This document shows, one piece after another, positions 1 through 29,930 of a stretch of DNA of 64,000 nt. Every line of letters begins with the position of its first letter. Position 1 is the first letter of the stretch. The notes below the pieces were generated by a model. That model did no database searches and was not told the origin of the DNA. It saw nothing but the letters and a program-made list of their open reading frames with translations. A program made the translations under genes and the position numbers. The stretch spans positions 186,001 to 250,000 of IMG/VR virus record IMGVR_UViG_3300032236_001850; one strand, given 5' to 3'.

Positions 1-117
1 ACCGCGGTTCATACTATGTTAGTAACATACTCTCCACGCGTATTGAATTTTAACGGTGGTTTGCATGGTAATTATGAAGTATTCATTATATTTGCTATGT
101 AATTAAAACAATTAAAC

Positions 118-312
118 ATGGAAGAACAAGTTAAAGAAGCCAGAGAACACTTCAGAAATCACAAATCACATATACACATTTATCAGATAGAAGATGATGT
201 CATAGCCGAACTCCTCGGGCGAGAGCATATTCAAAGATTATCTTTCGAGATGAAGATGGATTGCCTTTATGACCATTTGCTTTCCCAAGGTCTTTGTGAT
301 GTGACCGAATAA
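118..312 (+). CDS. hypothetical early protein
   Basis: ORF directly after a promoter repeat and A-rich leader. Confidence 0.7.
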   Translation: MEEQVKEAREHFRNHKSHIHIYQIEDDVIAELLGREHIQRLSFEMKMDCLYDHLLSQGLCDVTE

Positions 313-470
313 TTCACATGTAAACACATATTCACCGCCGGCCGAGGTGGTCTAGCGGGATCCCTGACAGGATAAAAAAATTCCGATGGATACTTGAAAT
401 TTTAACGTTTTATATCGTGGTTTATCAATAGGAATGCCTTATATTTGCCATGTAATTAAAACCAATCAAT

Positions 471-713
471 ATGAATCAAATCACACACGAACAATTAAGA
501 AATCGGCTTAGAGAAGGTTCAACCCGATTCTTTTTCAGAAAGACCAACGGTGAACTAAGACCTGCCTATGGCACAACAGATTTAACAAGAATTCCAAACC
601 ATTCCCATCCAAAGGGAGGTGACGCCCCGGTGGGTACCACTTGCTACTTTGACCTCGATAAGAATGCTTGGCGCTCAGTTTCACACACCCAAGAAATTTG
701 GTCCAATGAATAA
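471..713 (+). CDS. SH3-like beta-barrel protein (DUF2693/WYL_2-like)
   Basis: F.F.K.NGELR.A.GT...YFDLDK.AWRS pattern typical of this phage family. Confidence 0.7.
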   Translation: MNQITHEQLRNRLREGSTRFFFRKTNGELRPAYGTTDLTRIPNHSHPKGGDAPVGTTCYFDLDKNAWRSVSHTQEIWSNE

Positions 714-885
714 ACATGAAATCATAAGCAAGACCAGAAGACTGCTAAACTCCGCGGGCTTCGATGATATGGAATACACAATCAGCTTGCAAGGTCCAAC
801 GGTGATAATGGGAGAGGGCATGGAGGAAAAATTAACACCAGAATTACGAAAAGAAATCCTGGAAACAGGAATGAAGTTTCTATAA
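706..885 (+). CDS. hypothetical protein
   Basis: ATG at 706 overlaps the upstream stop; the ORF-track start at 619 is probably too long. Confidence 0.6.
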   Translation: MNKHEIISKTRRLLNSAGFDDMEYTISLQGPTVIMGEGMEEKLTPELRKEILETGMKFL

Positions 886-1153
886 CCAGGACTTCCTGCT
901 TTGGTCAGGTTATAGCTAAAGGGTGACATTTGAGAGTCACCCTTTTTTTTGTGGCATGAATTAGGCCTGGATACTTGCCCACCGAGGTCGACGGTGTGAC
1001 CGGATTCACATGCATTTTGATTCATGATGAAGCAAGCAATTGTTTTTCCGAATCGGATGATGCTTAACACCGAGGAAAAAACTTTAACGTTTAATATCGT
1101 TGTGAATTAACTATTATGTCTTATATTTGCTTTGCAATTAAAAAATCAAAATT

Positions 1154-1504
1154 ATGGGAACATTAAAAGCAGGAGACATGGTGATGGTAACCACACAGAA
1201 CGCAAACGGTGTGGGATTCATCTATAACACATATCCAGACAAACCAGAGGAAGGAGTCCTAAGAGCATCCATAGCCTGGAGCGACGGTGGATGTAGCGAC
1301 GGCCTTGTTATTTCGGAATTCAAAACCATAGAGAAAACCGGGGTGCTTACAGAAGAGAAAGGAAAAGAAATAATCAAGGAATTAGATGAATTTGCATCGG
1401 GTCTGGATAAGTATTCATTAGGCTTGCCTGGTGGAGTTGACCACACAGGAGAAATGGTTCATATAATCCGAATGGGTCTAATCAACGAGACCGTGGAAGC
1501 TTAG
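1154..1504 (+). CDS. hypothetical early protein
   Basis: ORF after promoter repeat. Confidence 0.7.
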   Translation: MGTLKAGDMVMVTTQNANGVGFIYNTYPDKPEEGVLRASIAWSDGGCSDGLVISEFKTIEKTGVLTEEKGKEIIKELDEFASGLDKYSLGLPGGVDHTGEMVHIIRMGLINETVEA

Positions 1505-1506
1505 TT

Positions 1507-1779
1507 ATGAGTGTTTCGATCAACGGTGAAGGCGCGAAGCTCTGGGGATTAGTCAGAGTTGATAGGGATCGCTACAGAGACACTTCACTGGAAATGTGGC
1601 TGGCCAACGATGAGGAACATCTTAAAGAGCAGATAAAGGAGGAATATCTACAGGATTACAATGACGGTGATTGGTTTAGAAAGGAGGTCGAGAAGGATTT
1701 TGAAGCGGATTGGGAATACACCATATTACCATTTGAAATAGACCTGAGCGGACTAGTAAAACCGTGGACCAAACTTTAA
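1507..1779 (+). CDS. acidic hypothetical protein
   Basis: Coupled to upstream ORF; D/E-rich. Confidence 0.7.
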   Translation: MSVSINGEGAKLWGLVRVDRDRYRDTSLEMWLANDEEHLKEQIKEEYLQDYNDGDWFRKEVEKDFEADWEYTILPFEIDLSGLVKPWTKL

Positions 1780-1844
1780 CGGTTTTTATCGTTGTGATTA
1801 CAAATAATTTCTTACTTTTACTCTGTAATTAAAATCAACCCATT

Positions 1845-2255
1845 ATGACAAAAGCAACATTAAGACAACAATTAGAAGCCTTCGATAGAGGCATTTACCT
1901 CGATTCCGACGGTAAGGAAAGTTGGTGCTACACTTTCTACGATTGGTTCTGTCAGGACTCATCACTGAAGAGAAAATCTGATAAATTATTCAAACAGGTT
2001 AAACGATTTGTAGCAGCAAACCCAAACATCAACCAGGATAAAACCTATGTGTTCTTCAAGAACAACTGTCCGATGAACGGACCTTTATACGATTCATTCT
2101 CAATCTGTGATATTGAAGGTGGTGGAGTTCTATACTGGGTTACAGGTAAGAGCGGACACACTTACCAAGCCGAGGTGTACTCCAGTGCTACTGGATTTGA
2201 AACTCCAGCAAGAACAGGTAAAAAATTCTCAGATTTAGTGAGGGATCCCCTATAA
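1845..2255 (+). CDS. hypothetical phage protein
   Basis: ORF after promoter repeat; FYDWFC and FKNNCP motifs. Confidence 0.75.
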   Translation: MTKATLRQQLEAFDRGIYLDSDGKESWCYTFYDWFCQDSSLKRKSDKLFKQVKRFVAANPNINQDKTYVFFKNNCPMNGPLYDSFSICDIEGGGVLYWVTGKSGHTYQAEVYSSATGFETPARTGKKFSDLVRDPL

Positions 2256-2509
2256 AATACATGCTCCATAATAATGGTGGTTTTAAAGGTGGGGGCCTCG
2301 TGAAAGCGAGGCTCTTTTTTTGTGACCAATCGCTAAGCAATTATCCACTGCTAGACACCGTTGACAACGGTGTGATGTAGATGATTCGATCGGGACCTCA
2401 AAAGATAGTATGTTACTAAGATACTCTCACGCGAGAAACTTTAACGGAATTTATCGTGGTTATATCAAATTGATTACTTACATTTACCATGTAATTTAAA
2501 CCAACCATT

Positions 2510-2767
2510 ATGAAAAAAGCAGCATTAATCTTTATCCGTTGGGGCATCTTCTACCCGATAACAATACCATTAATGTTTATATACGGTGTACCCACAGCGG
2601 CGGTGTTCTTCCTGTGGGAATGGATAGAAGATAAAAAGAAAACCAGTAACAAATTTGATAGCCGAGGTGCTAAGGCATTGAGAAAGTATGGTAGAATAAC
2701 ATCTATACCTTACTTCTTCTTGGCCCGGGTGGATGATAAGCTAAATCCAAATGGAAAGAGATTCTAA
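2510..2767 (+). CDS. membrane protein
   Basis: Hydrophobic N-terminal segment. Confidence 0.65.
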   Translation: MKKAALIFIRWGIFYPITIPLMFIYGVPTAAVFFLWEWIEDKKKTSNKFDSRGAKALRKYGRITSIPYFFLARVDDKLNPNGKRF

Positions 2768-3047
2768 TAAATTAATAAAGGCTAGGGAAGCAGCGTTAAA
2801 CTCCGTCGTCGGCGGTGTGATAGCGTGTCCATCCTGCGGAACACGCCACGCAAAATCCAGTTATCAATCAGTATTCTGTAAGTCAAAAGGCGGTACAAAA
2901 TGTAAAGATAATTACTGGAACAATGTCGACGGTGAGAAGCGGGACAACAAGACAAGAATTTCTCCAGCTAGAGAGAAATGGAATAAGCGAGTAAAGACAG
3001 AGAATAGTCTTAGAAAGGTTAAAAAAATGTTGGGTGTACTTAAATAA
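2751..3047 (+). CDS. zinc-finger protein
   Basis: CPSC...C...C motif. Confidence 0.65.
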   Translation: MERDSNKLIKAREAALNSVVGGVIACPSCGTRHAKSSYQSVFCKSKGGTKCKDNYWNNVDGEKRDNKTRISPAREKWNKRVKTENSLRKVKKMLGVLK

Positions 3048-3121
3048 AACTTTAACGTTTTTTATCGTTGATATCTCGAAAGGATCCCTTATATTTGCTT
3101 AGTAATTAAAACAAAAATAAA

Positions 3122-3358
3122 ATGGCTTCAGATTCTAAAAAAAATTCACATGATTCATTAAGAAACCCCAAGATTGGTGATAAAGTAGCTGTGCAGACTC
3201 ATTCCGACGGAAAAAAAATATGTGTTGTTGATAGTATTAATAATGAAAAAATTCATTTTAAAAATAGAAATTTTGGATTGGAGGTTAATCTTAATATGAT
3301 TTTTAATTTGGAAAAACCATATAGAGGTGCAAACTTTTTTTACCAATCCATTAATTAA
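3122..3358 (+). CDS. hypothetical protein
   Basis: ORF between two promoter repeats. Confidence 0.6.
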   Translation: MASDSKKNSHDSLRNPKIGDKVAVQTHSDGKKICVVDSINNEKIHFKNRNFGLEVNLNMIFNLEKPYRGANFFYQSIN

Positions 3359-3430
3359 AACCTTAACGGATTTTATCGTTATAACCACGAAAGGGTTTCT
3401 TATATTTGCTTAGTAATTAAAAATGAACAA

Positions 3431-3679
3431 ATGAACGAGATTAGAGACATTAACGATAGAGTACTTAAAAATCTGGATGTTATCGACCTTCACCAAACAG
3501 TCAACGGTGAAAACCTATTCATTGTGGCAGATTTGGAAGCCAAGGACATTCGATACTTTCATAATCCCTCATTGAAATACGAATACTCCGTTGATGACCT
3601 ATTCAGACCAGACAGGTACACAGGTGAGGTAGAATTTGAAATAATGGATAAGGAATGGGTAAATTGGGTAGAACTTTAA
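3431..3679 (+). CDS. hypothetical protein
   Basis: ORF between two promoter repeats. Confidence 0.7.
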   Translation: MNEIRDINDRVLKNLDVIDLHQTVNGENLFIVADLEAKDIRYFHNPSLKYEYSVDDLFRPDRYTGEVEFEIMDKEWVNWVEL

Positions 3680-3740
3680 CGTTTTATATCGTTGTTATCT
3701 CGAAAGGATCCCTTATATTTGCCCTGTAATTAAAACAAAA

Positions 3741-3941
3741 ATGACAAACACTATCATCTTCTTCCTTGCATTATGCTTCACCTTTTACTTCTTAGGTAAG
3801 CTAGCCACTTGGATGGTCTATAAAATAGCACCACAAAATTGTAAAAGAGAATTTGGAGGTAAAGATATTTTTATTACGAACACAGTGATGCTCATGGGTA
3901 TTATCCTTTGGACAATTTTATTTCACAATCTAACTCATTAA
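3741..3941 (+). CDS. two-helix membrane protein
   Basis: Two hydrophobic segments. Confidence 0.65.
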   Translation: MTNTIIFFLALCFTFYFLGKLATWMVYKIAPQNCKREFGGKDIFITNTVMLMGIILWTILFHNLTH

Positions 3942-3943
3942 AA

Positions 3944-4219
3944 ATGAAAAAATTCTCATATAAAATATTAATACTGGCGCTTATCCTAAGCCTAACCAGC
4001 TGCGCAGATGCAGAAACCGTGGACACTTGCTTGAAGGGACACACGTATGGATTTTGGGGTGGTCTCTGGCATGGACTTATAACACCATTCAGTTTTATAG
4101 GCTCATTAATCTGGGACGACATAACAGTCTATGCGGTTAACAACAACGGTGGATGGTACGATTTCGGCTTCTTGCTCGGCGTCGGCGGCTTGGGATTCGG
4201 TGGTGGTAGGAAAAGTTAA
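3944..4219 (+). CDS. lipoprotein-like membrane protein
   Basis: MKK signal with LTSC lipobox; GFWGGLWHG and WYDFGF motifs. Confidence 0.75.
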   Translation: MKKFSYKILILALILSLTSCADAETVDTCLKGHTYGFWGGLWHGLITPFSFIGSLIWDDITVYAVNNNGGWYDFGFLLGVGGLGFGGGRKS

Positions 4220-4717
4220 GGTTTCCATAATGCCTTAGAATTGGTTGGTTAATATGCTCGAAAAGGAAGACTTTGGTCTTCCTTTTTTTTGTGACCTTTT
4301 GACATGAAATCAGGGCGGCTCCCAATCCCACCGAGGACGACGGTATGATTGGATTATCCGATCGGGACCTCAAAAAATTGGAAAATAATTTTTTTTATTT
4401 GAAAGTTTTTCTTATATTTGTGGAGTAATTAAAATCAACACACATGTCAAAAACACACACAAGAGCTTCTCATAAGAGAACAATCTCAACAAGAACAGGT
4501 AACACCAATAGTAGAAAGACCATAACCGTTAGCAGTACCACGGTGAAAAGAAAGTAACCATGAGAAAGATTGGAAATTGGATACTTAAGGAATTATTATT
4601 GGAAATCAATCTAAACCCATCCCGAGGTGTTTACCACGTGAGAATGGGTTGGATTTGGATCATTTACTTCGGTGTTAAACTACTCGCAGGATTTCTTCAT
4701 CTATTAAAAGACCTATT

Positions 4718-5011
4718 ATGAAACTTTGGATGCTATTAATGGTTGGCTATGGTGTCTACCTTGCCTTCTTCAAGAAAGAGCCGGAGGTGCTAGAGGATCC
4801 GACCGAGCCCTCAAAAGATACTATGTTAGTAACATACTCTCCACGCGAGGGCCACGGTGAGAGACACGAGACGAGACATGAGCTAACCGAAGGAGCCAAG
4901 AGACTCATGGAATCTAATCTTAGTGATAAACAAAAGAATGATTATAAAGAAATATTTGGTAAAGATTTCTTAGACAAAAACGCTGAGGACACACCATTCA
5001 CCGATGTTTAA
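4718..5011 (+). CDS. membrane-anchored hypothetical protein
   Basis: N-terminal TM segment; contains an operator-like repeat in frame. Confidence 0.55.
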   Translation: MKLWMLLMVGYGVYLAFFKKEPEVLEDPTEPSKDTMLVTYSPREGHGERHETRHELTEGAKRLMESNLSDKQKNDYKEIFGKDFLDKNAEDTPFTDV

Positions 5012-5441
5012 CCCAACCCGAGGTATAAAGCATCAGACCGATTCGAAAGAGTCGGTTTTTTTGTGGGCTTTACCTTTTGATATGAATTAGGCCTGTCCTC
5101 TTTCTCACCGTCGACAACGGTGTATCTGAAGTTTATTTTAAGAGAATCTCCAATTGGAATCCTATGGAATCTCCAATGGGAAACACCGCGGAAAAACTTT
5201 AACGAAAAAATTCGTTGGGTATTAGTAAGTATTCATTATATTTGCTTAGTAATTAAAACAAACCAATCATGACAGAATCACAGGAAAAACAATTGGAATT
5301 AGAAATACTGATGTCATTAGAGAATGCAGCCTGTATAGGAAGAAGCCAACAAGACTACGGTGAATATTGTAAGAGACTAACTGCTGGTCTAATGACTAAA
5401 ATAAGAACATTTAACAAAAGTGAAACCACTAAAGAAAAATA

Positions 5442-5633
5442 ATGGCACGGATAATCAATAAAGTACACATCTCCACAATCCAACCAGGAGATGTTATATT
5501 TCACAACGGTGCTGACCGTACTCTCTCACAGAAAGATATTAAACATTGTCCTTTCATGGGCACAACGGTGTTTGGCGATTCTTACCATTTGGGGTACAAA
5601 CAAGTTAATAAAGTAACATTTAAAACTAATTAA
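5442..5633 (+). CDS. hypothetical protein
   Basis: ORF in early cassette. Confidence 0.65.
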   Translation: MARIINKVHISTIQPGDVIFHNGADRTLSQKDIKHCPFMGTTVFGDSYHLGYKQVNKVTFKTN

Positions 5634-5634
5634 G

Positions 5635-5820
5635 ATGGCAGAGTATAAAGTAACATTAACAATAGAACTCACGGTGCAAAGCTATTTAACAGAGGATGAA
5701 ATAGGCGATAACGTTGCAGAACAAATCAGCGTTAATTTCTTGGGCCAAGATATAACCGACGTTGAAATAGAGAGCGACCGTCTTGTTACTGTTGAGGTTT
5801 GGCAGGAAGGAAATGTATAA
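5635..5820 (+). CDS. acidic hypothetical protein
   Basis: Coupled to upstream ORF. Confidence 0.65.
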   Translation: MAEYKVTLTIELTVQSYLTEDEIGDNVAEQISVNFLGQDITDVEIESDRLVTVEVWQEGNV

Positions 5821-6094
5821 CGCACAACTAAACCGGCAACGGTGTAACCAAGAGGCTCAGCCTCTTTTTTTGTGGCCTTTTGACATGAAATCAGGGCGGC
5901 TCCCAATCCCACCGAGGACGGCGGTGGGAACAAGGGCAGGTCCTTAAACATAGTATGTTACTAAGATACTCCGCACGCGAGGGAGAAATCACCGAAGCCT
6001 TAGGTTACAGCTGAGCACAAGTGCTCCACACCGATGCCCGCGGAGGGTGCACGTCTTGCCCTTTTATTTTTTATGAGGTTTCCCACTGGGACCA

Positions 6095-6182
6095 CAAGAA
6101 AGGGCCTGGTAGATTACCTACCAGACCCTAACCAAACAAAACCAATTATTAAACCTATGGGATAACCAGTCCCTTATTATGA
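6095..6182 (-). ncRNA. putative small RNA
   Basis: Reverse-strand early promoter (6187-6237) and intrinsic terminator (hairpin 6101-6129) with no ORF between them. Confidence 0.55.
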
Positions 6183-6397
6183 TGGAGCAAATATAAGAAA
6201 TCCTTTTTGAATCCAAACGATACCAAACCGTTAAAGTTTCAACAACGGTGTGTTTCCAGAGGCTCCAAGAAAAATCCCCAGATGGAATTCAGATGGACCC
6301 GATGCTTTCCACCGTGAGAAAAACTTTAACGGATTTTATCGTTATTAATTAGTTTTTATACATTATATTTGCTTAGTAATTAAAACCAATTCACATT

Positions 6398-6871
6398 ATG
6401 AAAAAAATCACAATCTTATTAGCTTTGACCATCGGTGTATCAGCATGGTCTCAATGTCACAAATCTGAAATCCCTTCTTCAGTTACTGCAACCTTCAGCG
6501 GTGGATTCGCCAAGACCATGTGTGGGGAATTATCTTTTCGTCTCAGAACTTTCTATGTCGGCGCCGGTGTGGGAGTGATGGTCGATAATGAAATTAGAAA
6601 TGAAGGTGGTATCATTTATACTAGAAACGATCATGCTTACTTCGTAAACCTCGGGTTTCAAAAGGACAACATCCACTACGGTGTGAGAATCGGGAATCAA
6701 ACCCAAGTTCATGTTACTGGAACAGTCGGCGGTGTGAGACAGGAGCTACCTAATGAAAACAAACTCTTGGTAGGAGCGCTCATCGGCTACAGTGTTACAC
6801 CGCGAATCAGATTTAATCTCGGCTACGATACATTTAATAAAGTCAACCTAGGTGCTGCTTTCGGGCTCTAG
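6398..6871 (+). CDS. outer-membrane beta-barrel-like protein
   Basis: Signal peptide; alternating Gly/aromatic strands. Confidence 0.6.
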   Translation: MKKITILLALTIGVSAWSQCHKSEIPSSVTATFSGGFAKTMCGELSFRLRTFYVGAGVGVMVDNEIRNEGGIIYTRNDHAYFVNLGFQKDNIHYGVRIGNQTQVHVTGTVGGVRQELPNENKLLVGALIGYSVTPRIRFNLGYDTFNKVNLGAAFGL

Positions 6872-7292
6872 TTAAAACACCCAAACATAGTATGTTACTA
6901 AGATACTATGCACGCGAGGGCTCACGGTGAGGAACGTGAGCCTTTTTTTGTTTAAAGGTTAAGGAATTAGATTGAACAAACGTGTAAGCACCGTCGGCCG
7001 CGGAGAAATGCATGTGAAAGAAGAGAAAGCCATAAGAAAGGGAAGAGAAGAAAGAGAAAGAGATAAGAAGAAGATAAAGAAGAGACAGATGTAACACACC
7101 GTGGCCCTGGAGCACTTAGACCCCTATAGCTAAAATTAAAGTTAAGCTTAGGTAAAGCTAGGTAAAATAGTACTAAACCGTCGACGACGGTGGGACACGG
7201 ATTTGCTTATTTCAAAACGTTAAAGTTTGAAAGAAATTTTTTTTATTAAAAAGAAAGCCTTATATTTGCTCTGTAATTAAAACATAAACAAT

Positions 7293-7526
7293 ATGAAAAA
7301 TCTAATCATCTTAATTTTAATCGTCCTAGGTTTATCACTGCAATCTTGTGGTAGTGCTTGTGCAAGAACTCACAGATACTGGAACACTCATCGTTGCGTG
7401 CAAACAACGGTGAAGACAAGTAAGCAAGAAGAAAAATCATCTTCTCTATTTAACAACATAAACGCCGGTGCAGCACGGATGCTCTGTTTTGATCAGATGC
7501 AAACTGACCGAGGTGTAATCACATAA
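7293..7526 (+). CDS. putative lipoprotein
   Basis: LQSC lipobox. Confidence 0.6.
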   Translation: MKNLIILILIVLGLSLQSCGSACARTHRYWNTHRCVQTTVKTSKQEEKSSSLFNNINAGAARMLCFDQMQTDRGVIT

Positions 7527-7983
7527 GCATGTTTTAATTACACTCTAACTGCTCGAAAAGAGGCTCAGGGAAACCTGGGCCCTTTTTGTGGGGTGCCCCC
7601 AAATATCTATTATAAGCATGTAGCCCACCGATGCCGACGGTGAGCAAAGGGAAGACATCCTTAATTTAATGGCATGCTCTTGCCCGAGGTGAATTACCTT
7701 TTTACATTGCCTAATTTTAAAATGCAAATTTATGCATGTTAATCACCGTCAAAAACTAAGCCCCCCTCCAATATTATGAAGGGGGGTAAAATTAGGGTCC
7801 CCTATAGGGGCTATGAAGCCCCCTCGTATAAGGAGCATATTGGGGGCCTGAAAGAGCTTATTAGGGGACCCTTATTTTGGAGAAAGCCTTGTATACTATG
7901 TAAGGGACCCCGGTTTTGAAGGGCCAATTTGAGGGGGCCTCGTGCGTGGCATAGGGTGGGCACCGTGAGAACGCTTCGGCGGT

Positions 7984-8107
7984 TCTAACAAGAATGGGCA
8001 AGAGTTCCGACTTACTCTAACAAGAATGGACAAGAGTTTCTACTTACTCTAACAAGAATGGACAAGAGTTTCTACTTACTCTAACAAGAATGGGCAAGAG
8101 TTTCGAC
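7984..8107 (+). repeat. 4 x 32-bp tandem repeat
   Basis: TCTAACAAGAATGGRCAAGAGTT units at 7984, 8016, 8048, 8080, without spacers. Confidence 0.9.
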
Positions 8108-8286
8108 TCTCTACTCTCTCTACTCTAATAATGGATGGCAAGGGTCAATTCAGTTCCACTATAACTATGGCAGAGATCCCATTCTCTGATCCCATTCTCT
8201 ATATAGCAGCAAAGTACCCCTTCATTTGTTCCGTCTGGATAGGGACTTGGTTCACCTAGATATATAAGAGAAACAAATATCATTTT

Positions 8287-8607
8287 ATGAAACACCTTAA
8301 GCCAATCAACGAGTTCTTTTTCTTTGGAGGAACAACTAGATTCATCATCGTGGAAGGCACAGAGCCATTCCACACAGAGATCCAAGCCCGCATAGACGCC
8401 ATGGAGGAATCGGGAGAGTTGGCCATAGTTGATATGTCCACTTGTGATGTGGCAGAGATTGAAGCAGCTGTGGCATCTGATGCCATGAAGATCCTTTTCG
8501 TTAACGGAGACGAGTGTGATCGTGCCATTAGATACGCTGTCATGGATCTACATCCTGAGATCATCCCTGCCCCTGAGTTGTCTCAAGAAGATCTTGACGT
8601 GTCCTAA
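8287..8607 (+). CDS. acidic putative virion protein
   Basis: GATATATA upstream; MKHLKPINEF N-terminus. Confidence 0.7.
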   Translation: MKHLKPINEFFFFGGTTRFIIVEGTEPFHTEIQARIDAMEESGELAIVDMSTCDVAEIEAAVASDAMKILFVNGDECDRAIRYAVMDLHPEIIPAPELSQEDLDVS

Positions 8608-8723
8608 TCCCATCTTTAGAGTCAATAGCAATCCCTGGGTGTGGGCCCGGCCCCTAGAAAAATGAGGCGCAAAATGGCTCCACAGCGCCTTCGCCTTGGT
8701 TTTATTGGAAGATATATAGCAAC

Positions 8724-9116
8724 ATGAAAAGAATCAAAACATTTGAGGAACTCTTTGAGAGCATGCTAGACGGCTCGCTGAGAATTCAGAGGAACGAACT
8801 CGACAAGACATCCTGGGAATACAGCTGGTTGCTTGGTGGCAGAGAGGTTGGGGGGATGATGGTCTTTGTGGACGGAGGGAATGCTAGCATCGTGAGTTTC
8901 TTCAAACACAGAGGCAGGGAGACGCCGAGAGGTTGTGGGTATGTATTCATCAAGATGTGCATCGACGATCTGCTGGAATCTGGATTTGCTGTGCATCAGG
9001 CTGATCACACATCCAATGCAAACTCCCAAGTGATTTGGAGAAAGCTTGCAAATGAATACAAGGTGGAGACCACGACTTGGAGAGGAGATCCTGCCAAGGT
9101 TATTAGAAAAAAATGA
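8724..9116 (+). CDS. GNAT-like putative virion protein
   Basis: RGCG motif and N.NSQ.IW.KL resemble GNAT motifs; capsid-targeting-like N-terminus. Confidence 0.5.
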   Translation: MKRIKTFEELFESMLDGSLRIQRNELDKTSWEYSWLLGGREVGGMMVFVDGGNASIVSFFKHRGRETPRGCGYVFIKMCIDDLLESGFAVHQADHTSNANSQVIWRKLANEYKVETTTWRGDPAKVIRKK

Positions 9117-24209: not shown

Positions 24210-24662
24210 ATGGAATGGAAAAGTCTAACTACGAAAAAGTCCATCGACCTATCTAGCTACTTAGCTGATTGGATGGCAAACAACCCTGAAGACAAGATCT
24301 ACATAGGGTGTGATTCGCAAAATCACAACGGCACTACGACATTCGCTACGGTTATTGTATTACATCAACCGAACAGGGGAGGACACGTGCTTTACAGCAA
24401 GATGACAATACCTAGAATACAAGCTAGGTACGAAAGGCTGTGGAAGGAAATCGAATTAAGTGCAGAAACAGCACACGAAATTATGGAGAATGCTGGGCAA
24501 ACTCCTGACTTCATTGATATCGACCTTAATCCAGATCCTAGACATCAATCTAATACGCTGTTAAGATCCGCTGTAGGTTTAATAGAGGGTATGGGTCTAA
24601 AGGCTAGATACAAGAGTGCATCTAACTGGTCCATCTCTATTGCAGATTCTATATGTAAATAG
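24210..24662 (+). CDS. RNase H-like YkuK/DUF458 family protein
   Basis: IYIGCDSQ, RLW.E...S, DIDLN, AD. Confidence 0.85.
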   Translation: MEWKSLTTKKSIDLSSYLADWMANNPEDKIYIGCDSQNHNGTTTFATVIVLHQPNRGGHVLYSKMTIPRIQARYERLWKEIELSAETAHEIMENAGQTPDFIDIDLNPDPRHQSNTLLRSAVGLIEGMGLKARYKSASNWSISIADSICK

Positions 24663-24748
24663 AAAAAATTCTGATAATTGAAACAAATTTCAAAATTTCG
24701 GTACAATTATTGATATATAAAATCTCTAAACATTAAAAAATTACAAAA

Positions 24749-24928
24749 ATGAAAAGGACATTATTCTTACTTGCAGTACTCTTCTCGCTGAGTCTAACAT
24801 CATGCAAACACGTAGATGCTAAAGCTTCTACTGATGCAGCAGTTGACACCACAGCAGTTGATACGACTAAAGTTGATTCTACAGCAGTAGACACAACAGC
24901 AGTTAAAGTAGACACAACAAAGGCATAA
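24749..24928 (+). CDS. small lipoprotein with VDTT repeats (not in ORF track)
   Basis: MKRTLFLLAVLFSLSLTSC lipobox; GATATATA upstream; terminator downstream. Confidence 0.75.
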   Translation: MKRTLFLLAVLFSLSLTSCKHVDAKASTDAAVDTTAVDTTKVDSTAVDTTAVKVDTTKA

Positions 24929-25059
24929 ATCAGAATAAGGTTTATATCTAAAGGGTCTAGTTTACTAGACCCTTTTTAATTTAAAAAAGATTCAAAAATA
25001 TTTTTTTATCTCGAAAACATTTCATATATTTGCAATGTAATTAAAAATAAAATAAAACT

Positions 25060-25133
25060 GGCCCCGTAGCTCAGCTGGATAGAGCATCAGATTTCTAATC
25101 TGAGGGTCGAAGGTTCGAATCCTTCCGGGGTCA
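25060..25133 (+). tRNA. tRNA-Arg(TCT)
   Basis: Full cloverleaf; loop TTTCTAA. Confidence 0.95.
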
Positions 25134-25147
25134 CTAAATTAAAAATT

Positions 25148-25243
25148 GGGTATAATTACTACAATGTCTGACATAATCAATTGGTAATCCTAGGGAGGAG
25201 TAAGTCTGTACCAGTAGTTTGGGTTCGAGTCCCAATATATCCA
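25148..25243 (+). ncRNA. tRNA-like RNA (acceptor stem and T arm, non-canonical core)
   Basis: GGGTATA/TATATCC-A, TTGGG-TTCGAGT-CCCAA. Confidence 0.55.
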
Positions 25244-25305
25244 CAAATAAACTAAAATGAAAAAACGATACGATATGCATTAGGTTTAATATAACCAAAT
25301 GCAAA

Positions 25306-25554
25306 ATGTCAAAAAACAGAAACAGAGCAAAGCTCAACAAGTGTTTAACTCCAAGAGAGTACAAATTAACATATCTAAAGCATGAATATGATTATTGCTT
25401 TACATGTTGCAAAAGAGCTGGAAGCTTTTATTATGATTGTTCTCCCATGTCAATGAAAAAGAAAGGGAGACACGGAAACGGTAAAATAATTTCTACATTT
25501 GATGCTAGATCTTATAGAACCTGGAAGCATACTAGAAGAACACAGTATAAATAA
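25306..25554 (+). CDS. basic Cys-containing protein
   Basis: C..CC motif; R.YRTWK..R..QYK. Confidence 0.6.
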   Translation: MSKNRNRAKLNKCLTPREYKLTYLKHEYDYCFTCCKRAGSFYYDCSPMSMKKKGRHGNGKIISTFDARSYRTWKHTRRTQYK

Positions 25555-25561
25555 TAACCCT

Positions 25562-25634
25562 GCCCGGGTGGTGGAATGGAAGACACGCTAGTTTTAGGCA
25601 CTAGATTTTGAGGGTTCGAGTCCCTCCTCGGGTA
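25562..25634 (+). tRNA. tRNA-Leu(TAG), short variable region
   Basis: Cloverleaf; loop TTTAGGC. Confidence 0.85.
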
Positions 25635-25841
25635 CAAAATACAAAAAAATGAAAGTAGATATAAATTACGTAAGCACAAAGCATTTTCCGATTAACAAGT
25701 TGGGATGGTGGGCATTTTACTTTAAGAGGTATACCTACATTAGAGGTTTTAATTTAAGAATATTTGGGATTCATTTCAACATAAGAGAAGCCCATGCAAC
25801 TGAAAAACTTTTGAATTTCAGTAAATAGTAAATCATAAAAT

Positions 25842-25920
25842 GCGTTTGTGGTGGAATGGTAGACACGCTAGTTTAAGGAGCTAGTGCTTAGGCGTGGGAG
25901 TTCGAGTCTCCCCAGACGTA
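25842..25920 (+). tRNA. tRNA-Leu(AAG)
   Basis: Cloverleaf; loop TTAAGGA. Confidence 0.85.
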
Positions 25921-25933
25921 CAAAACTATAAAA

Positions 25934-26203
25934 ATGCCAGAAGTACATATAATTGATAGCATTCAGGGTATGGGATGGAATAATCCAAATGAATCTTTAC
26001 CATCATTTGGTAAATATGTTTTAGTATTTGGGATCGACAACTCTATGTACGGAATTGAAAATTTCCACGTTTGTAGTATGGACGACCTAGAGGATGGCAT
26101 GGAATTTTTAGAAACCGGAAATTTTTACTGGTTAACTGAATCTGGTAAAAAGATAGATAGTGTTAGAGCATGGACACATCTTCCTGACTCACCAAATATA
26201 TAA
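25934..26203 (+). CDS. DUF551-like phage protein
   Basis: W......LP...VLV ... V.AW..LP..P. Confidence 0.6.
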   Translation: MPEVHIIDSIQGMGWNNPNESLPSFGKYVLVFGIDNSMYGIENFHVCSMDDLEDGMEFLETGNFYWLTESGKKIDSVRAWTHLPDSPNI

Positions 26204-26211
26204 ACACATCA

Positions 26212-26637
26212 ATGATCTCAATCTACTTAGACGACACTAGAACGCCATTAGAACACCCTTTAGGTAAAGAATGGATCACAGTAAGAGATTATGATCAATT
26301 CGTTGATTTGGTCTCTAAAACAGGCTTAAACAACGTAGAATTAATATCATTGGACCACGATCTTGGTCCATTAGCAGTAGATCATTTCTTCGGACACACT
26401 AGAGAAAATTACGAGATAATATACAAATGGATTCCGGAGAAAACAGGAATGTGTGTTGTTAAGTGGTTAATCAAACACGCGAGAGAAAACAATTTGGATC
26501 TTCCACAGTGTTATGTTCATAGTGCTAATCCAATAGGATCTGGCAATATGATGGGTTACATCAACATGTATCTCAAAGAAAGAAGAAAGGCTCAGAACTG
26601 CATAAGAGCCAAATGGAAGCACAACTACATAAAATAA
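26212..26637 (+). CDS. cyclic-phosphate-processing receiver-like domain protein
   Basis: YLDD.R.P, ISLDHDLG, TG, HSANP.G. Confidence 0.8.
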   Translation: MISIYLDDTRTPLEHPLGKEWITVRDYDQFVDLVSKTGLNNVELISLDHDLGPLAVDHFFGHTRENYEIIYKWIPEKTGMCVVKWLIKHARENNLDLPQCYVHSANPIGSGNMMGYINMYLKERRKAQNCIRAKWKHNYIK

Positions 26638-26662
26638 GAATGCGAATCCGGATATATAACGG

Positions 26663-27349
26663 ATGAAACATTTACAACTATTCGAAGAATTTACATATTC
26701 ACAAGAATCACTAAACGAGGATCTTCTTGCTGATATAATTGATAAAGCAAAAAAAGGTGTGGCTGCTGGAGCTCTAGTTGCTGCCCTATTAGGTTCACCC
26801 GATGTTAGTGCACAGGATAAAACTGCAATCCAACAAGCAAACCAAAAAACAGAAGCTCCACAGGAAGCCAATGGTGTTGGAGTTGGTATATCGCCAGACC
26901 TTTCATTTTCAAAGGACATCTCACTGACAAGAGCTATAGCTGATCTTGCAAAAAATTTACCAGATGGCACAACACTATCGTATGAGATGGTTGATCAAAA
27001 AACAGTTATGGAAGGTAAAAATTATAAGACAACAACAATTCTAAAGATATCAGCGGATGGTACCAAAGTGAGTCCAGCTCAATTGACAATCAAGAAAAAA
27101 TTGGTCGTTAGAGATGATGCTAGACTTAAAAGAGAATCCCACATGGAGGATGTTAATGCTGAACTTCTTGCAAGAGCTAAAAGATTTGGATTTGATACAG
27201 TTGAGGAATATATGGCTTGGCAAGAGGAAAGAAATAAAGGTAAGGACCAGCCATTAGATGGCTTGGAAGGACCAAATTTCTCACATGGAAAATGTGGTAT
27301 CTCTAAAGCAGGAGCAAAGGATGCTAAAAAGGAGTGGAGTAAAAAATAA
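26663..27349 (+). CDS. putative virion protein
   Basis: MKHLQLFEEF...LNE; GATATATA upstream. Confidence 0.7.
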   Translation: MKHLQLFEEFTYSQESLNEDLLADIIDKAKKGVAAGALVAALLGSPDVSAQDKTAIQQANQKTEAPQEANGVGVGISPDLSFSKDISLTRAIADLAKNLPDGTTLSYEMVDQKTVMEGKNYKTTTILKISADGTKVSPAQLTIKKKLVVRDDARLKRESHMEDVNAELLARAKRFGFDTVEEYMAWQEERNKGKDQPLDGLEGPNFSHGKCGISKAGAKDAKKEWSKK

Positions 27350-27353
27350 AGAT

Positions 27354-27599
27354 ATGAAACATATACAGAAATTTAATTCTACATTGCTCGAGGATGCAAT
27401 GAATAAAAATACTAACACTTCACTAAGAACCGTTTTGGTAACATATGAAGGAAAAGAAATGAAAGCCCTTGCGATAGGATACGGATCCGGACCATATTTC
27501 GTGGAAAAATACTATATTCTTGAGGATACCCCCTACGACACAACAGATTTTGATGATGTGAAAGAGATCAACCCGGAGGAAATAATTAAAAATATTTAA
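27354..27599 (+). CDS. putative virion protein
   Basis: MKHIQKFNSTLLE. Confidence 0.6.
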   Translation: MKHIQKFNSTLLEDAMNKNTNTSLRTVLVTYEGKEMKALAIGYGSGPYFVEKYYILEDTPYDTTDFDDVKEINPEEIIKNI

Positions 27600-27698
27600 A
27601 AAAATCAAAAATAATTTTTTTTATTCGAAACTTTTTCCTAAATTTGCATAAAATATTAAAATCAACTAGATATATAAATCTATAATTTAAAAAACTCA

Positions 27699-27827
27699 AT
27701 GAAAACAACTTTCAGAAATATTGTAAAACCGTTTATGCCGCAGAGCGTTGCACCCTTTAATCAGGTGGGCATTGCCAAATGGTATAATGGGTACAGCAAG
27801 GGATCTGGAGGTCACAATATAATTTAA
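27699..27827 (+). CDS. leader peptide 1 (42 aa; not in ORF track)
   Basis: MKTTFRNIVKPFMPQSVAPFNQVGIAKWYNGYSKGSGGHNII between promoter and terminator. Confidence 0.75.
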   Translation: MKTTFRNIVKPFMPQSVAPFNQVGIAKWYNGYSKGSGGHNII

Positions 27828-27897
27828 TGTAAAGCACTAGTCAAATAAGCATTAAATATTTTTACTCCAGATCCTAAAAGATCTGGAGTTTTTTTTT
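27801..27897 (+). terminator. attenuator 1: terminator 27864-27897 with antiterminator strand 27801-27810
   Basis: ACTCCAGATC/GATCTGGAGT plus T run; GGATCTGGAG is a perfect complement of CTCCAGATCC. Confidence 0.8.
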
Positions 27898-27918
27898 GAA
27901 TTAGAAACAATAAAAAAA

Positions 27919-27991
27919 CTGGGTGTGGCGCAGTTGATAGCGCGGTTGCTTTGGGAGCAACAGGTCGTCGGTTTGAGTCCGGCCACCCAGA
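27919..27991 (+). tRNA. tRNA-Pro(TGG)
   Basis: Cloverleaf; atypical D loop and T loop (TTTGAGT). Confidence 0.8.
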
Positions 27992-28071
27992 AATGATCAA
28001 AAAGGAATGCTTCCACGTAGCGATCATTGGTAACATCCGAAAGGATGGCTAGATTCCTTATTAATAGAATT

Positions 28072-28911
28072 ATGAAAGAAATAGATATAATATTAAAATC
28101 CGGTTCAATGGGGGATGCAAGTCTATCCATATATGGTTATTGCAACACTGTGACAACTAGAAAAATCAGAAAGATATTAAATGACAATAATGTATCGGAA
28201 GAAATTTTTATAAAAAATGATAGTAAAAGAAATATAATAACCAAAAAATGCCCGTCATGCGGAAATGAATTTAAAACTAGAGCTGATAAAAAGGAAAGAA
28301 CTTGTTGCAGTATAGCATGTGCAAATTCACATAAACCAAAAAGAATTAAGGACCCATATTTAGTAGGAAAAAAGTCGGAGATAAAAACAGTAAGGAAACA
28401 AATAATTAAAAAAATAGATAGAAAATGTCAACTCTGCGATTCTGACTATATAGGTTCAAAAAAATCTAAATTTTGTTCAGCTATATGTAGAAACCAGCAT
28501 CAATCGGAAACAATGAAATTGAATATTAAAAATGGGATATGCAAGGGTTGGCAATCAAGGAACATAGAGAGCTATCCCGAGAAATTTTTTAAGACTGTAT
28601 TATCAAATAATAACATAGATTTTATATTAAATCATCCAGTTTCAAAAAAATCATTAGGAGTCGATAGCAATGCATATTATTTTATCGATTTTTATATAGT
28701 AAAGGACGGAAAAAATATAGACCTAGAGATTGATGGCAAACAACATAAACTTTTAGATCGTAGAGATAGTGACACTGAAAGAGATATGCTTTTGAATAAT
28801 AATGGATATTTAGTATATAGAATCGAATGGAATGACATAAATTCAAAAGCTGGCAAAATAAGAATAGAAGAAAAAATAAATAACTTCTTAATATTCTATA
28901 ATAAATTATAA
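28072..28911 (+). CDS. free-standing endonuclease, DUF559/Vsr-like, with zinc fingers
   Basis: CxxC...CSxxC repeats; YFIDF, LEIDGKQH, D..RD..L...GY.V.RI.W. Confidence 0.8.
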   Translation: MKEIDIILKSGSMGDASLSIYGYCNTVTTRKIRKILNDNNVSEEIFIKNDSKRNIITKKCPSCGNEFKTRADKKERTCCSIACANSHKPKRIKDPYLVGKKSEIKTVRKQIIKKIDRKCQLCDSDYIGSKKSKFCSAICRNQHQSETMKLNIKNGICKGWQSRNIESYPEKFFKTVLSNNNIDFILNHPVSKKSLGVDSNAYYFIDFYIVKDGKNIDLEIDGKQHKLLDRRDSDTERDMLLNNNGYLVYRIEWNDINSKAGKIRIEEKINNFLIFYNKL

Positions 28912-28916
28912 ATGAA

Positions 28917-29144
28917 ATGGCAACAATAAAAGAAATCGTAAAAGACAACAAAGTTAGATTCTCACATCTAAAGAATGACATCGCTTATTACAATGTTTTT
29001 ATTGAAGGAGCGGATCACACATTTCCAGTTAGACTGAATGATATAGGTGAAGCAACTTTGTTAGCTGAAGATAATGCCATCTTCTTTATGAGATACATTA
29101 GAAAGGCTTTAGAGAACAACGAGTTCCATAAGGCATCTAGGTAA
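28917..29144 (+). CDS. hypothetical phage protein
   Basis: FPV...DIG.AT......AIFFMRYIRK. Confidence 0.75.
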   Translation: MATIKEIVKDNKVRFSHLKNDIAYYNVFIEGADHTFPVRLNDIGEATLLAEDNAIFFMRYIRKALENNEFHKASR

Positions 29145-29148
29145 ACAT

Positions 29149-29219
29149 ACGGGCTTGGTGCAATGGTAGCATACCGGTCTCCAAAACCGACGATGAAGGT
29201 TCGAATCCTTCAGTCCGTG
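29149..29219 (+). tRNA. tRNA-Trp(CCA)
   Basis: Cloverleaf; loop CTCCAAA. Confidence 0.93.
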
Positions 29220-29228
29220 CAAATTTAA

Positions 29229-29299
29229 TGGGATATGGTGTAACGGTAACACAACTGGTTTTGGTCCAGTTATTCCAGGTTCGAATCCTGGTATCCCAA
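29229..29299 (+). tRNA. tRNA-Gln(TTG)
   Basis: Cloverleaf; loop TTTTGGT. Confidence 0.93.
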
Positions 29300-29475
29300 C
29301 AAATAAAATTAAAAAATTATCAAAAAATATTTTTTTAATTCGAAAGCATTTCATACATTTGCGATGCAGATAAAGAAGGATCTTTGACATAATGGAAACT
29401 AAATCAATACGATAAAGTGGAAAAGTTTTAATAAACCAGACAGGTTTATTAAACAAAATGAGCTTTATCATTACT

Positions 29476-29549
29476 GACCTCGTAGCTCAGCTGGCTAGAG
29501 CACCTCACTTTTAATGAGGGAGTCATGGGTTCGAGTCCCATCGGGGTCA
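29476..29549 (+). tRNA. tRNA-Lys(TTT)
   Basis: Cloverleaf; loop CTTTTAA. Confidence 0.95.
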
Positions 29550-29554
29550 CAATA

Positions 29555-29839: not shown

Positions 29840-29845
29840 CAACAT

Positions 29846-29919: not shown

Positions 29920-29930
29920 CAAATTAAAAA

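What the first reader, a model, noticed from the sequence alone, without database searches (positions are those of the whole stretch)
2267..7560. Putative antisense RNAs against translation-initiation regions
Seen: a stand-alone minus-strand unit (6095-6182) has a promoter and terminator, no ORF, and contains AAUUGGUUUUGUUUGGUU. Several 3' UTRs hold similar tracts: 2267-2287 is the reverse complement of TTTAAAACCACCATTATTATG (compare leader 2495-2512); 7529-7542 is a perfect 14-nt complement of its own leader (7272-7285); 4239-4253 reads AATTGGTTGGTTAAT. Established: Bacteroidota initiate on A-rich leaders without Shine-Dalgarno sequences. Inference: small RNAs that block early-phage or host start regions.
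Basis: partly seen in the sequence, partly recalled or inferred. Interest (0 to 1): 0.6.

Follow-up and report, generated by a model that had tools for sequence, protein, structure and literature searches.

The report
Phage anti-leader 3'UTRs and small RNA
In the early-gene array of a 434-kb uncultured phage, several mRNA tails carry conserved sequences complementary to the shared first bases of the phage's own early messages, and next to them lies a conserved ~90-nt non-coding RNA gene; together they look like an untested RNA-pairing control of translation in a host group that lacks Shine-Dalgarno sites.

Summary
The window lies in a 434,509-bp phage genome. Window 1-7600 is an array of tiny plus-strand gene cassettes with Bacteroidota-type promoters, G-free A/C-rich leaders and hairpin terminators.

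**Minus-strand unit (6183->6094).** It is a real, ORF-free promoter-to-terminator unit, conserved in one relative and in a pond strain. All stem changes keep pairing, and only on the minus-strand RNA. However, its U/G tract is not conserved. Its fit to the leaders is no better than composition-matched shuffles (p=0.34), and no outlier target exists genome-wide.

**3'UTR tracts.** These are the stronger result.
- 6 of 12 pre-terminator segments are complementary to the leaders beyond chance, against 4% of random segments.
- Four of these sites are conserved in relatives.
- The strongest two are inverted copies of the invariant transcript start GUAAUUAAAAC (2 copies against 0.09 expected).
- For gene 7293-7526 the mRNA is predicted to close on itself (P 0.89-0.97 in three phages).

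No RNA data exist, so function is inferred. The most likely mechanism is 5'-end/leader occlusion of the icaR type, in cis or in trans. Verdict: observation partly confirmed, interpretation partly supported, a new variant of a known kind.

The parts
6188..6240 (-). Promoter of the non-coding unit: upstream CTTTAACGG..TATCGTT element, then the -7 box TTATATTTG (6196->6188). Predicted +1 at 6183.
   Evidence: This is the only minus-strand copy of the full cassette promoter in the 434-kb genome. It is conserved in L010. The +1 rule (G of the -7 box is at -5) comes from PMC6847099.
6094..6183 (-). Predicted ~90-nt non-coding RNA: 5' hairpin, C-free U/G-rich linker, intrinsic terminator.
   Evidence: It has no ATG. 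It folds better than shuffles, z=-2.7. It has no Rfam match. It is conserved in L010, L048 and L049 and in a pond strain, and absent from the complete relative G001.
6159..6173 (-). 5' hairpin of the RNA (GGGA..UCCC).
   Evidence: A hairpin is retained in L010 in a register shifted by one base. This is weak evidence.
6130..6158 (-).
   Evidence: It is not conserved in L010, which has a 7-nt deletion. Complementarity to leaders gives p=0.34. It shares a 13-nt identity with the 3'UTR tract that lies 180-192 nt left of the window.
6101..6129 (-). Terminator hairpin (12-13 bp) followed by the tail UUCUUGUGG (6100->6092).
   Evidence: It is the best terminator-like site in 1-9000. Between the window and L010 there is one G-C to A-U double change and two wobble changes, all still paired. 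The pond strain changes 6102 G>A and 6105 C>T keep pairing only on the minus-strand RNA.
5927..6246 (.). 320-bp accessory cassette carrying the RNA unit. It is an insertion/deletion relative to the closest complete relative, and its ends lie in the CACCG..CGGTG palindrome.
   Evidence: Alignment A9; BLAST synteny.
7522..7542 (+). Invariant 21-mer spanning the stop codon and the 3'UTR. Its core, 7529-7542, is the inverted copy of the early transcript start (anti-leader).
   Evidence: It is 100% identical in L018, L010 and L006, while the coding 3' end upstream has diverged. The 12-mer occurs twice in this orientation against 0.09 expected. Both sites are conserved in relatives. z=-8.5.
7273..7295 (+). 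Predicted 5' end and leader of the gene 7293-7526 mRNA (GUAAUUAAAACAU...AUG).
   Evidence: In the fold of the whole 320-nt mRNA, nt 1-13 pair with 7529-7541 with P=0.94-0.97. The orthologous mRNAs give 0.89 and 0.90.
7562..7587 (+). Intrinsic terminator of the gene 7293-7526 transcript.
4220..4262 (+). 3'UTR with an anti-leader tract (CCAUAAUG...GAAUUGGUUGGUUAAU) just before the terminator at 4263-4290.
   Evidence: p=0.007 against shuffles. The orthologous tracts in G001 and G002 are also complementary to their own leaders. The tract is partly conserved.
6376..6400 (+). Leader of the OmpA-like gene 6398-6871, the best predicted partner of the 4220-4262 tract (-17.6 kcal/mol over almost the whole leader and the start codon).
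   Evidence: The ortholog's leader is also the best partner in G001, but not in G002. OmpA_membrane domain, E=8.4e-6.
2256..2290 (+). 3'UTR with the window-specific anti-leader tract 2267-2287.
   Evidence: p=0.027 for the best leader and <0.003 for the mean. The predicted own-mRNA closure is P=0.63. The tract is absent from L018 and L010.
2491..2512 (+). Leader of gene 2510-2767, the best predicted partner of the 2267-2287 tract (-14.1 kcal/mol).

Best explanation
Window 1-7600 is the right-hand part of an array of small, presumably early, gene cassettes of a 434-kb phage.

**The cassettes.** Each is read by a Bacteroidota-type host promoter. Each gives an mRNA that starts with the near-invariant GUAAUUAAAAC and has a short, G-free, SD-less leader.

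**Two kinds of RNA element sit on this array.**
1. Anti-leader tracts lie between the stop codon and the terminator of some cassettes. The strongest are inverted copies of the invariant transcript start. They pair with early-mRNA 5' ends and start regions. For gene 7293-7526 this happens within the same molecule (5'-3' closure). For others it would have to act on other early mRNAs. Because initiation in this host group depends on an unstructured A-rich leader, pairing would lower translation and could create double-stranded substrates for RNases.
2. A separately transcribed ~90-nt non-coding RNA (6183->6094) sits in a 320-bp accessory cassette. It carries a C-free U/G-rich linker related to one of the 3'UTR tracts. 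It may work the same way, but its target is not identifiable.

**Shown:** the elements exist, they are non-random, they are conserved, they are strand-specific, and the fold predictions favour pairing.
**Inferred:** transcript ends, actual pairing in cells, and any effect on translation or decay.
For: **Promoter class and +1**
- Promoter class.
- +1 rule: PMC6847099.
- 21 leaders without G.

**Anti-leader tracts**
- 6 of 12 pre-terminator 36-mers have z<=-2, against 3 of 70 random 36-mers.
- Four orthologous sites stay significant in G001, G002 and G003 against their own leaders.
- The inverted 12-mer occurs twice against 0.09 expected. Both copies lie just before early terminators and both are conserved in relatives, with 0 hits for the reversed control pattern.
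- The 21-mer at 7522-7542 is invariant while the adjacent coding sequence diverges.

**Predicted pairing**
- 5'-3' closure has P=0.97, 0.89 and 0.90 in three phages, while most other early 5' ends are unpaired at 0.1-0.3.
- The 4220-4262 tract pairs best with the leader of the same orthologous OmpA-like gene in two of three genomes.
- A distant relative with a different leader motif has a pre-terminator tract matching that motif.

**Non-coding unit**
- Its promoter and terminator are conserved.
- All five stem substitutions keep pairing. The G.U pairs exist only on the minus-strand RNA.

**Precedent:** icaR 5'-3' UTR pairing (PMC3868564).
Against: - No transcript data exist. None of the 16 listed runs that hold this DNA is on record as RNA.
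- The stand-alone RNA's tract is not conserved, is not specifically complementary (p=0.34), and has no outlier target.
- By raw energy the A/U-rich duplexes are weak. G-rich coding windows score as well against leaders.
- Partners are inconsistent. Some tracts fit their own leader, others fit another gene's leader. The tract 740-775 nt left of the window fits its own variant leader poorly.
- The 2267-2287 tract is lineage-specific.
- The same start motif also precedes a tRNA gene at 25024. It may therefore be a promoter or initiation signal at the DNA level, whose inverted copies could be protein sites.
- Only one of nine pre-terminator segments is significant in the distant relative.
Confidence: 0.42

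Rival explanations
1. **DNA-level reading.** GTAATTAAAAC is a promoter-proximal initiation or operator motif. Its core TAATTA is palindromic. On this reading the inverted copies before terminators, and the inter-cassette palindromes, are protein-binding or recombination sites, or scars of cassette inversion and duplication. The RNA complementarity would then be a by-product.
For: - The motif follows the -7 box in about 30 promoters, including a tRNA promoter.
- The cassette array is clearly shuffled at CACCG..CGGTG palindromes. The 320-bp indel sits exactly there.
- The reverse complements of the 3'UTR tracts look like whole leaders including ATG. This fits an origin by inverted duplication.
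- The invariant 21-mer does not co-evolve with its own gene's variable leader.
Against: - The weaker tracts (4220-4262, 2256-2290) match the variable leader bodies and start codons, not the DNA motif.
- Complementarity begins at the predicted +1.
- Only two inverted 12-mers exist genome-wide, and both lie inside transcripts just before terminators.
- An origin by inverted duplication does not exclude a present RNA function.
Confidence: 0.22
2. **No function in leader control.** U/G-rich pre-terminator tracts and A/C-rich leaders are independent compositional features. The minus-strand unit is an orphan or decayed cassette, a promoter plus terminator that has lost its ORF, or it is only a transcriptional insulator between divergent units.
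For: - The unit is accessory: it is absent from complete G001.
- Its linker drifts quickly.
- Its complementarity is at the level expected from composition.
- In the pond strain it starts with the canonical leader motif, as the protein cassettes do.
- Many 3'UTRs have no such tract.
Against: - The shuffle tests keep composition, and 6 of 12 pre-terminator segments are still outliers.
- Conservation of the 21-mer exceeds that of the neighbouring coding sequence.
- No variant of the unit has an ORF, and its stem changes are all pairing-preserving on one strand only.
Confidence: 0.18
3. The stand-alone RNA, and possibly RNAs processed from the 3' ends, act on the host rather than on phage leaders. 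They would pair with host mRNAs or titrate a host RNA-binding protein. The RNA has four AGG motifs and a long U/G tract. Alternatively they counter a defence system.
For: - The unit is an accessory, moron-like cassette.
- It has no convincing phage target.
- It has no known family.
- Trans-acting small RNAs that target start regions are known in Bacteroides (title and abstract of PMC7366714).
Against: - The host is unknown, so nothing could be tested.
- The linker is not conserved between the two phages that carry it. That is unusual for a seed region.
- No related unit was found in other relatives with the covariance model.
Confidence: 0.15

Closest known systems
icaR mRNA 5'-3' UTR pairing in Staphylococcus aureus (PMC3868564)
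   Same: A motif in the 3'UTR is complementary to the translation-initiation region of the same mRNA. The pairing blocks initiation and creates an RNase III substrate. Gene 7293-7526 shows the same geometry in silico (P about 0.9-0.97).
   Different: - Here the target is not a Shine-Dalgarno site. It is the extreme 5' end, +1 to +13, of an SD-less leader.
- The motif is shared by about 20-30 transcripts, so action in trans is equally possible.
- The 3'UTR is only about 35 nt long.
- Nothing here is experimentally shown.
hbs mRNA 5'/3'-UTR interaction in Bacillus subtilis (PMC5737220; title and abstract only)
   Same: An interaction between the two mRNA ends influences ribonuclease access. This is a possible stabilising, rather than repressing, role for the predicted closure.
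   Different: The organism and the RNases differ, and no data exist here.
3'UTR-derived and stand-alone base-pairing small RNAs (enterobacterial CpxQ and SroC recalled from memory; Bacteroides GibS, PMC7366714)
   Same: The architecture is a single-stranded pairing tract followed by an intrinsic terminator, either at an mRNA 3' end or as its own gene. The targets are start regions.
   Different: - No processing or accumulation is shown.
- The linker of the stand-alone RNA is not conserved, and no target was found.
- No chaperone is known for this host group.
Phage antisense regulators (P1/P7 c4, P22 sar, lambda OOP; recalled from memory, not tested)
   Same: Phage-encoded RNA pairs with the start region of a phage mRNA. 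The c4 RNA is cut from the transcript that it regulates.
   Different: Those act on one specific gene. Here the complement addresses a start motif common to a whole promoter class, and there is no sequence relationship.

Membership tests
Bacteroidota sigma-A type promoter (-33 TTG / -7 TAnnTTTG) | A -7 box TAnnTTTG with G at -5, and a TTG about 19 nt upstream. | tested here: met
   TTATATTTG is present in all cassette promoters and in the minus-strand unit, with ..CGTTG 19 nt upstream. Rule from PMC6847099.
Cis 5'-3' UTR pairing element (icaR type) | The 3'UTR is complementary to the initiation region of the same mRNA. | tested here: met
   7529-7541 pairs with 7273-7285, 13 nt from the predicted +1. 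The pairing probability is 0.94-0.97, and 0.89-0.90 in orthologs. This is met for this gene only. Other tracts fit other genes' leaders better.
Cis 5'-3' UTR pairing element (icaR type) | Both partners lie on one mapped transcript, and pairing lowers translation or triggers cleavage. | not testable with these tools
   No RNA run holds the region. Transcript ends are predicted only.
Trans-acting base-pairing small RNA | Own promoter, intrinsic terminator, no ORF. | tested here: met
   The promoter and terminator are conserved in L010.
Trans-acting base-pairing small RNA | A conserved single-stranded seed. | tested here: not met
   The linker differs in L010 by a 7-nt deletion and substitutions. 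Only GGUUUAAU and UGGUUAG-like pieces persist.
Trans-acting base-pairing small RNA | Target complementarity beyond chance. | tested here: not met
   p=0.34 against the 21 early leaders. Across 1046 phage start regions the best energy is -28.0, against -24.4+-2.4 for shuffles, whose best is -30.1. Host targets could not be tested.
Trans-acting base-pairing small RNA | The RNA accumulates in infected cells. | not testable with these tools
   All 16 runs that hold the DNA are DNA runs.
3'UTR-derived small RNA | The 3' end of the mRNA is more conserved than its coding sequence. | tested here: met
   Alignment A3: 7522-7600 is almost invariant in three phages, while the last ~30 coding nt diverge. 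Processing was not testable.
Any Rfam family | A covariance-model match. | tested here: not met
   There is nothing at gathering score in the finding region. At E<=5 there are only three chance-level hits elsewhere in 1-9000.

The most novel reading that the evidence does not exclude
The phage group carries a sequence-addressed switch for a whole promoter class. Every early transcript begins with the same 11-12 nt. Conserved 'anti-5'-end' RNAs, embedded in a few 3'UTRs and in a stand-alone accessory RNA, recognise that common tag. They close or occlude the SD-less leaders, and so time or shut off early translation globally. This would be an RNA counterpart of T4 RegB-type early-mRNA shut-off, adapted to Bacteroidota-style initiation.
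Probability: 0.15. Interest if true: 0.75.

Novelty: new variant of a known kind. Interest (0 to 1): 0.45.

Why it matters
How translation is regulated in Bacteroidota is poorly understood. Their start sites are chosen without Shine-Dalgarno pairing and depend on unstructured A-rich leaders. Almost nothing is known about this for their phages, or for phages of several hundred kilobases.

The finding gives a small, well-defined set of elements that can be tested directly with reporters and compensatory mutations in Flavobacterium or Bacteroides:
- a 21-nt invariant 3'UTR element;
- three further conserved tracts;
- one ~90-nt RNA gene.

If the pairing is real, it would show that 3'UTR-to-5'-end pairing can substitute for anti-SD mechanisms. 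It would also show that a phage can address a whole class of its own transcripts through their common first bases. If it is not real, the elements still mark the grammar of these phage gene arrays (promoter, start motif, terminator, junction palindrome), which is useful for annotation.

Tried and rejected
**Database and run searches**
- DNA searches of the phage collection, near and distant modes: no match.
- Rfam at gathering and at permissive thresholds: no family.
- RNA evidence: none of the 16 listed runs that hold the DNA is on record as RNA. Laying four pond runs gave only a strain variant.

**Search for more copies of the non-coding unit**
- Exact patterns found only L010, plus two metagenome contigs identical to it.
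- The covariance model R1, built from two sequences, found no convincing copy in G001, G003, G004 or G005. Its marginal hits were a coding stretch and another U/G-rich 3'UTR.

**Readings considered and rejected**
- Minus-strand genes behind the inverted leaders: rejected. There is no -7 box upstream, and the frames are 3-40 codons long and inconsistent.
- A local hairpin that would hide the 7529-7542 tract (7513-7545): it is not conserved in relatives.
- A sliding 24-nt energy scan as the sole criterion: rejected as uninformative. G-rich coding windows score as well as the tracts.
- The stand-alone RNA as the Y RNA of the Ro60-like gene: unlikely. It lies 31 kb away, and a weak YrlA-like hit sits next to that gene instead.

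**Limits and failures**
- The pair-count statistics on two sequences have no power: 253 of 500 shuffles do as well.
- A first attempt to fold all transcripts timed out. It was repeated for transcripts up to 650 nt.
- A CRISPR-repeat-mimic (RNA anti-CRISPR) reading of the terminator hairpin was only considered from memory and not tested.

Full report
**Context.** The window is bases 186,001-250,000 of a single 434,509-bp virus record with direct terminal repeats and 35% G+C. It carries 31 tRNA genes. It has no DNA match in the annotated phage collection. A ClpB-like protein in the window is about 58% identical to ORFs of 635-642-kb uncultured phages.

Window 1-7600, together with about 6 kb to its left, is an array of very small plus-strand ORFs. 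Each cassette has:
- a strongly conserved promoter, AACTTTAACG-N-ATCGT-N~17-TTATATTTGC, followed by GTAATTAAAAC;
- a short leader;
- a hairpin terminator with a T-run followed by GTGRCC.

The -7 box is the Bacteroidota TAnnTTTG. In Flavobacterium johnsoniae the G of that box lies at -5 (PMC6847099). The transcripts are therefore predicted to start at the G of GUAAUUAAAAC. All 21 leaders listed lack G before the ATG, so there is no Shine-Dalgarno sequence. Of ten small proteins tested, only 6398-6871 matched a family, the OmpA-like beta-barrel.

**Check of the observation.** Every quoted string is at its coordinates.

**The minus-strand unit**

*Anatomy.*
- The full promoter, including its upstream element, occurs about 19 times on the plus strand between genome positions 180.3 and 192.3 kb. 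It occurs exactly once on the minus strand, at window 6240->6188.
- The predicted start is 6183.
- The hairpin at 6129->6101, followed by UUCUUGUGG, is the best terminator-like site in 1-9000.
- The ~90-nt product has no ATG and folds better than shuffles, z=-2.7.
- No Rfam family matches it.

*Conservation.*
- A homologous unit is present in a 66.6-kb IMG/VR fragment (L010, G002) at about 75% identity, and in two metagenome contigs identical to L010.
- Between the window and L010 the terminator stem shows one G-C to A-U double change and two wobble changes, with all 15 modelled pairs intact.
- A strain variant in four pond or viral metagenome runs changes 6102 G>A and 6105 C>T.
- In all three versions the stem contains a G.U pair that would be an A.C mismatch on the plus strand. 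The hairpin is therefore kept as a minus-strand RNA.
- In the pond strain the unit begins with the canonical GTAATTAAAA.

*An accessory element.* The closest complete relative (G001, 430 kb, 72-83% identical across the array) lacks window 5927-6246 precisely. The deletion or insertion ends lie in the CACCG..CGGTG palindrome that follows most terminators.

*What fails.*
- In L010 the quoted tract AAUUGGUUUUGUUUGGUU is replaced by a shorter, different U/G-rich sequence.
- Its best duplex with the 21 leaders is -11.9 kcal/mol, against -11.4+-2.1 for dinucleotide shuffles, p=0.34.
- Its 10-nt perfect match to the neighbouring leader at 6382-6391 is one of roughly ninety such 10-mer matches in the genome.
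- A scan of 1046 phage start regions gives no outlier.

The unit is a real, conserved non-coding gene, but the case that it targets leaders rests on composition alone: a C-free RNA facing G-free leaders.

**The 3'UTR tracts.** These gave the stronger result. I took the 36 nt before each of the 12 terminator hairpins of the array and compared the mean duplex energy with all leaders against shuffles.
- Six segments have z<=-2: -8.6, -8.5, -3.4, -2.9, -2.2 and -2.0.
- Only 3 of 70 random 36-mers of the same region reach z<-2; the null has mean z 0.05 and sd 1.07.

The same test in the relatives, each against its own leaders, finds four orthologous sites that remain significant:
- the site at 7522-7542;
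- the site at 4220-4262;
- two sites left of the window, 740-775 nt and 160-195 nt before window base 1.

The tract at 2267-2287 is missing from both relatives.

The two strongest sites are inverted copies of the shared transcript start.
- TGTAATTAAAAC occurs twice in this orientation in the whole genome, against 0.09 expected.
- Both copies lie just before early terminators.
- Both are kept in G001 and G002, and one in the G003 fragment. The reversed control pattern gives no hits.
- The 21-mer at 7522-7542 is identical in all four genomes, although the last ~30 coding bases before it have diverged. In IMG/VR it occurs only in these relatives.

The orthologous genes' own leaders differ after position 11-12. 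What is conserved is therefore the complement of the common start motif, not of a private leader.

**Cis or trans.**
- Folding the whole predicted mRNA 7273-7592 pairs nt 1-13 with 7529-7541 at P=0.94-0.97. The orthologous mRNAs give 0.89 and 0.90.
- Most other early mRNAs keep a free 5' end, with P(paired) of 0.1-0.3.
- The 2315 unit closes at 0.63.
- The 4283-type unit closes at 0.65 and 0.64 in the two relatives, but at only 0.05 in the window. In the window its tract instead fits the leader of the OmpA-like gene 6398 at -17.6 kcal/mol, covering nearly the whole leader and the AUG. The ortholog of that gene is also the best partner in G001, but not in G002.
- The site 740-775 nt left of the window fits canonical leaders at -15.4 kcal/mol but fits its own variant leader poorly.

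The set is not uniform: one clear cis case, and others that would have to act in trans.

A more distant 373-kb relative (G004) uses a different leader motif, GTAACCAAtTAAAAC. It has one pre-terminator U/G tract that matches that motif, at z=-2.8 and -21 kcal/mol. The other eight segments there are unremarkable.

**Mechanism proposed.** In F. johnsoniae, initiation is tuned by secondary structure around the start and by upstream adenines (PMC6847099). A duplex over +1 to +13, or over the whole 20-nt leader and the AUG, should therefore reduce ribosome loading. It might also give RNase III a substrate, as shown for the icaR 3'UTR and its SD region (PMC3868564). Protection of the mRNA ends, as reported for hbs (PMC5737220), is the opposite possible outcome. 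None of this is shown here. No RNA run holds the phage, so transcript ends, accumulation of 3' fragments and any effect are all inferred.

**Rivals.**
1. *A DNA-level role.* The start motif also precedes a tRNA gene, and its core TAATTA is palindromic. The reverse complements of the tracts look like entire leaders with ATG, which fits inverted duplication in a cassette array that visibly recombines at palindromes. Against this, the weaker tracts match variable leader bodies rather than the motif, and the only two inverted 12-mers lie inside transcripts.
2. *No function.* This is contradicted for the 3'UTRs by composition-preserving controls and by conservation, but it remains a live option for the stand-alone RNA's supposed targeting.
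3. *Host-directed or protein-titrating RNA.* This is untestable without the host.

**Verdict.**
- The stand-alone RNA is real, but not demonstrably an anti-leader RNA.
- The 3'UTR anti-leader elements are real, non-random and conserved. The best of them is more likely a cis 5'-3' closure element than a separate small RNA.
- Compared with known systems this is a new variant of 3'UTR/5'UTR pairing and antisense control: an SD-less target at the extreme 5' end, shared by a promoter class, in a very large phage.
- I put the probability that RNA pairing of these elements regulates early-gene expression at about 0.4. I put the probability that the stand-alone RNA specifically targets phage leaders at about 0.2.

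Noticed in passing
window 980, 2356, 5106, 5910, 7626 (and five more just left of the window): A 17-bp near-palindrome, CACCGnnGnCnACGGTG, lies about 40 nt after 10 of the early terminators. The half-site ACGGTG is 11-fold enriched on the plus strand of the array (39 copies against 3.5 expected), also inside ORFs, with strand bias. The 320-bp cassette indel relative to G001 has its ends in this element. It may be an operator, an RNA hairpin or a recombination junction.
   Followed up: partly
window 10-40, 2405-2440, 4818-4850, 5948-5985, 6886-6920: A repeated element, (G)ATAGTATGTTACTAAGATACT..CACGCGAG, with an internal 5-7-bp inverted repeat. It occurs before promoters, before a terminator, and once inside ORF 4718-5011. 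It is also repeated in the relatives.
   Followed up: no
window 7760-7960: A G+C-rich island directly after the last cassette. It is highly conserved in four phages and is built of repeated GGGGNCCC-like palindromic units plus a CCCCCC..GGGGGG hairpin. It could be a structured RNA, iterons or a packaging site. The aligned stretch is 7585-8010.
   Followed up: partly
window 37732-39312 and 36035-36117: The ORF has a TROVE (Ro60-like) domain, E=2e-10. About 1.6 kb upstream is a sub-threshold YrlA (Y RNA-like) match of 31.9 bits, E=0.00095, among tRNA genes. This may be a phage Ro60 and Y-RNA module.
   Followed up: partly
window 24278-42985: 31 tRNA genes in clusters. At least one, tRNA-Arg at 25060, sits behind a promoter with the same GTAATTAAAA start motif as the protein cassettes.
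   Followed up: no
window 6398-6871: A cassette gene encodes a 157-aa protein with a signal-peptide-like N-terminus and an OmpA-like beta-barrel domain (E=8.4e-6). Genes 3944-4219 and 7293-7526 look like small lipoproteins, with LTSC and LQSC lipobox-like motifs seen by eye.
   Followed up: partly
window 45234-46253: The ORF has an N-terminal major tropism determinant (Mtd_N) domain, E=4.5e-10. This hints at a diversity-generating retroelement target or a receptor-binding protein.
   Followed up: no
window 47854-49980: A ClpB/Hsp100-type double AAA+ chaperone gene. It is 58-59% identical to ORFs in the 642-kb and 635-kb uncultured phages LR756502 and LR745206.
   Followed up: no
window 6042-6075: A plus-strand terminator-like hairpin with a T-run faces the minus-strand RNA's terminator. 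No recognisable plus-strand promoter lies between 5880 and 6040. It may catch read-through from the terminator at 5850-5872.
   Followed up: no
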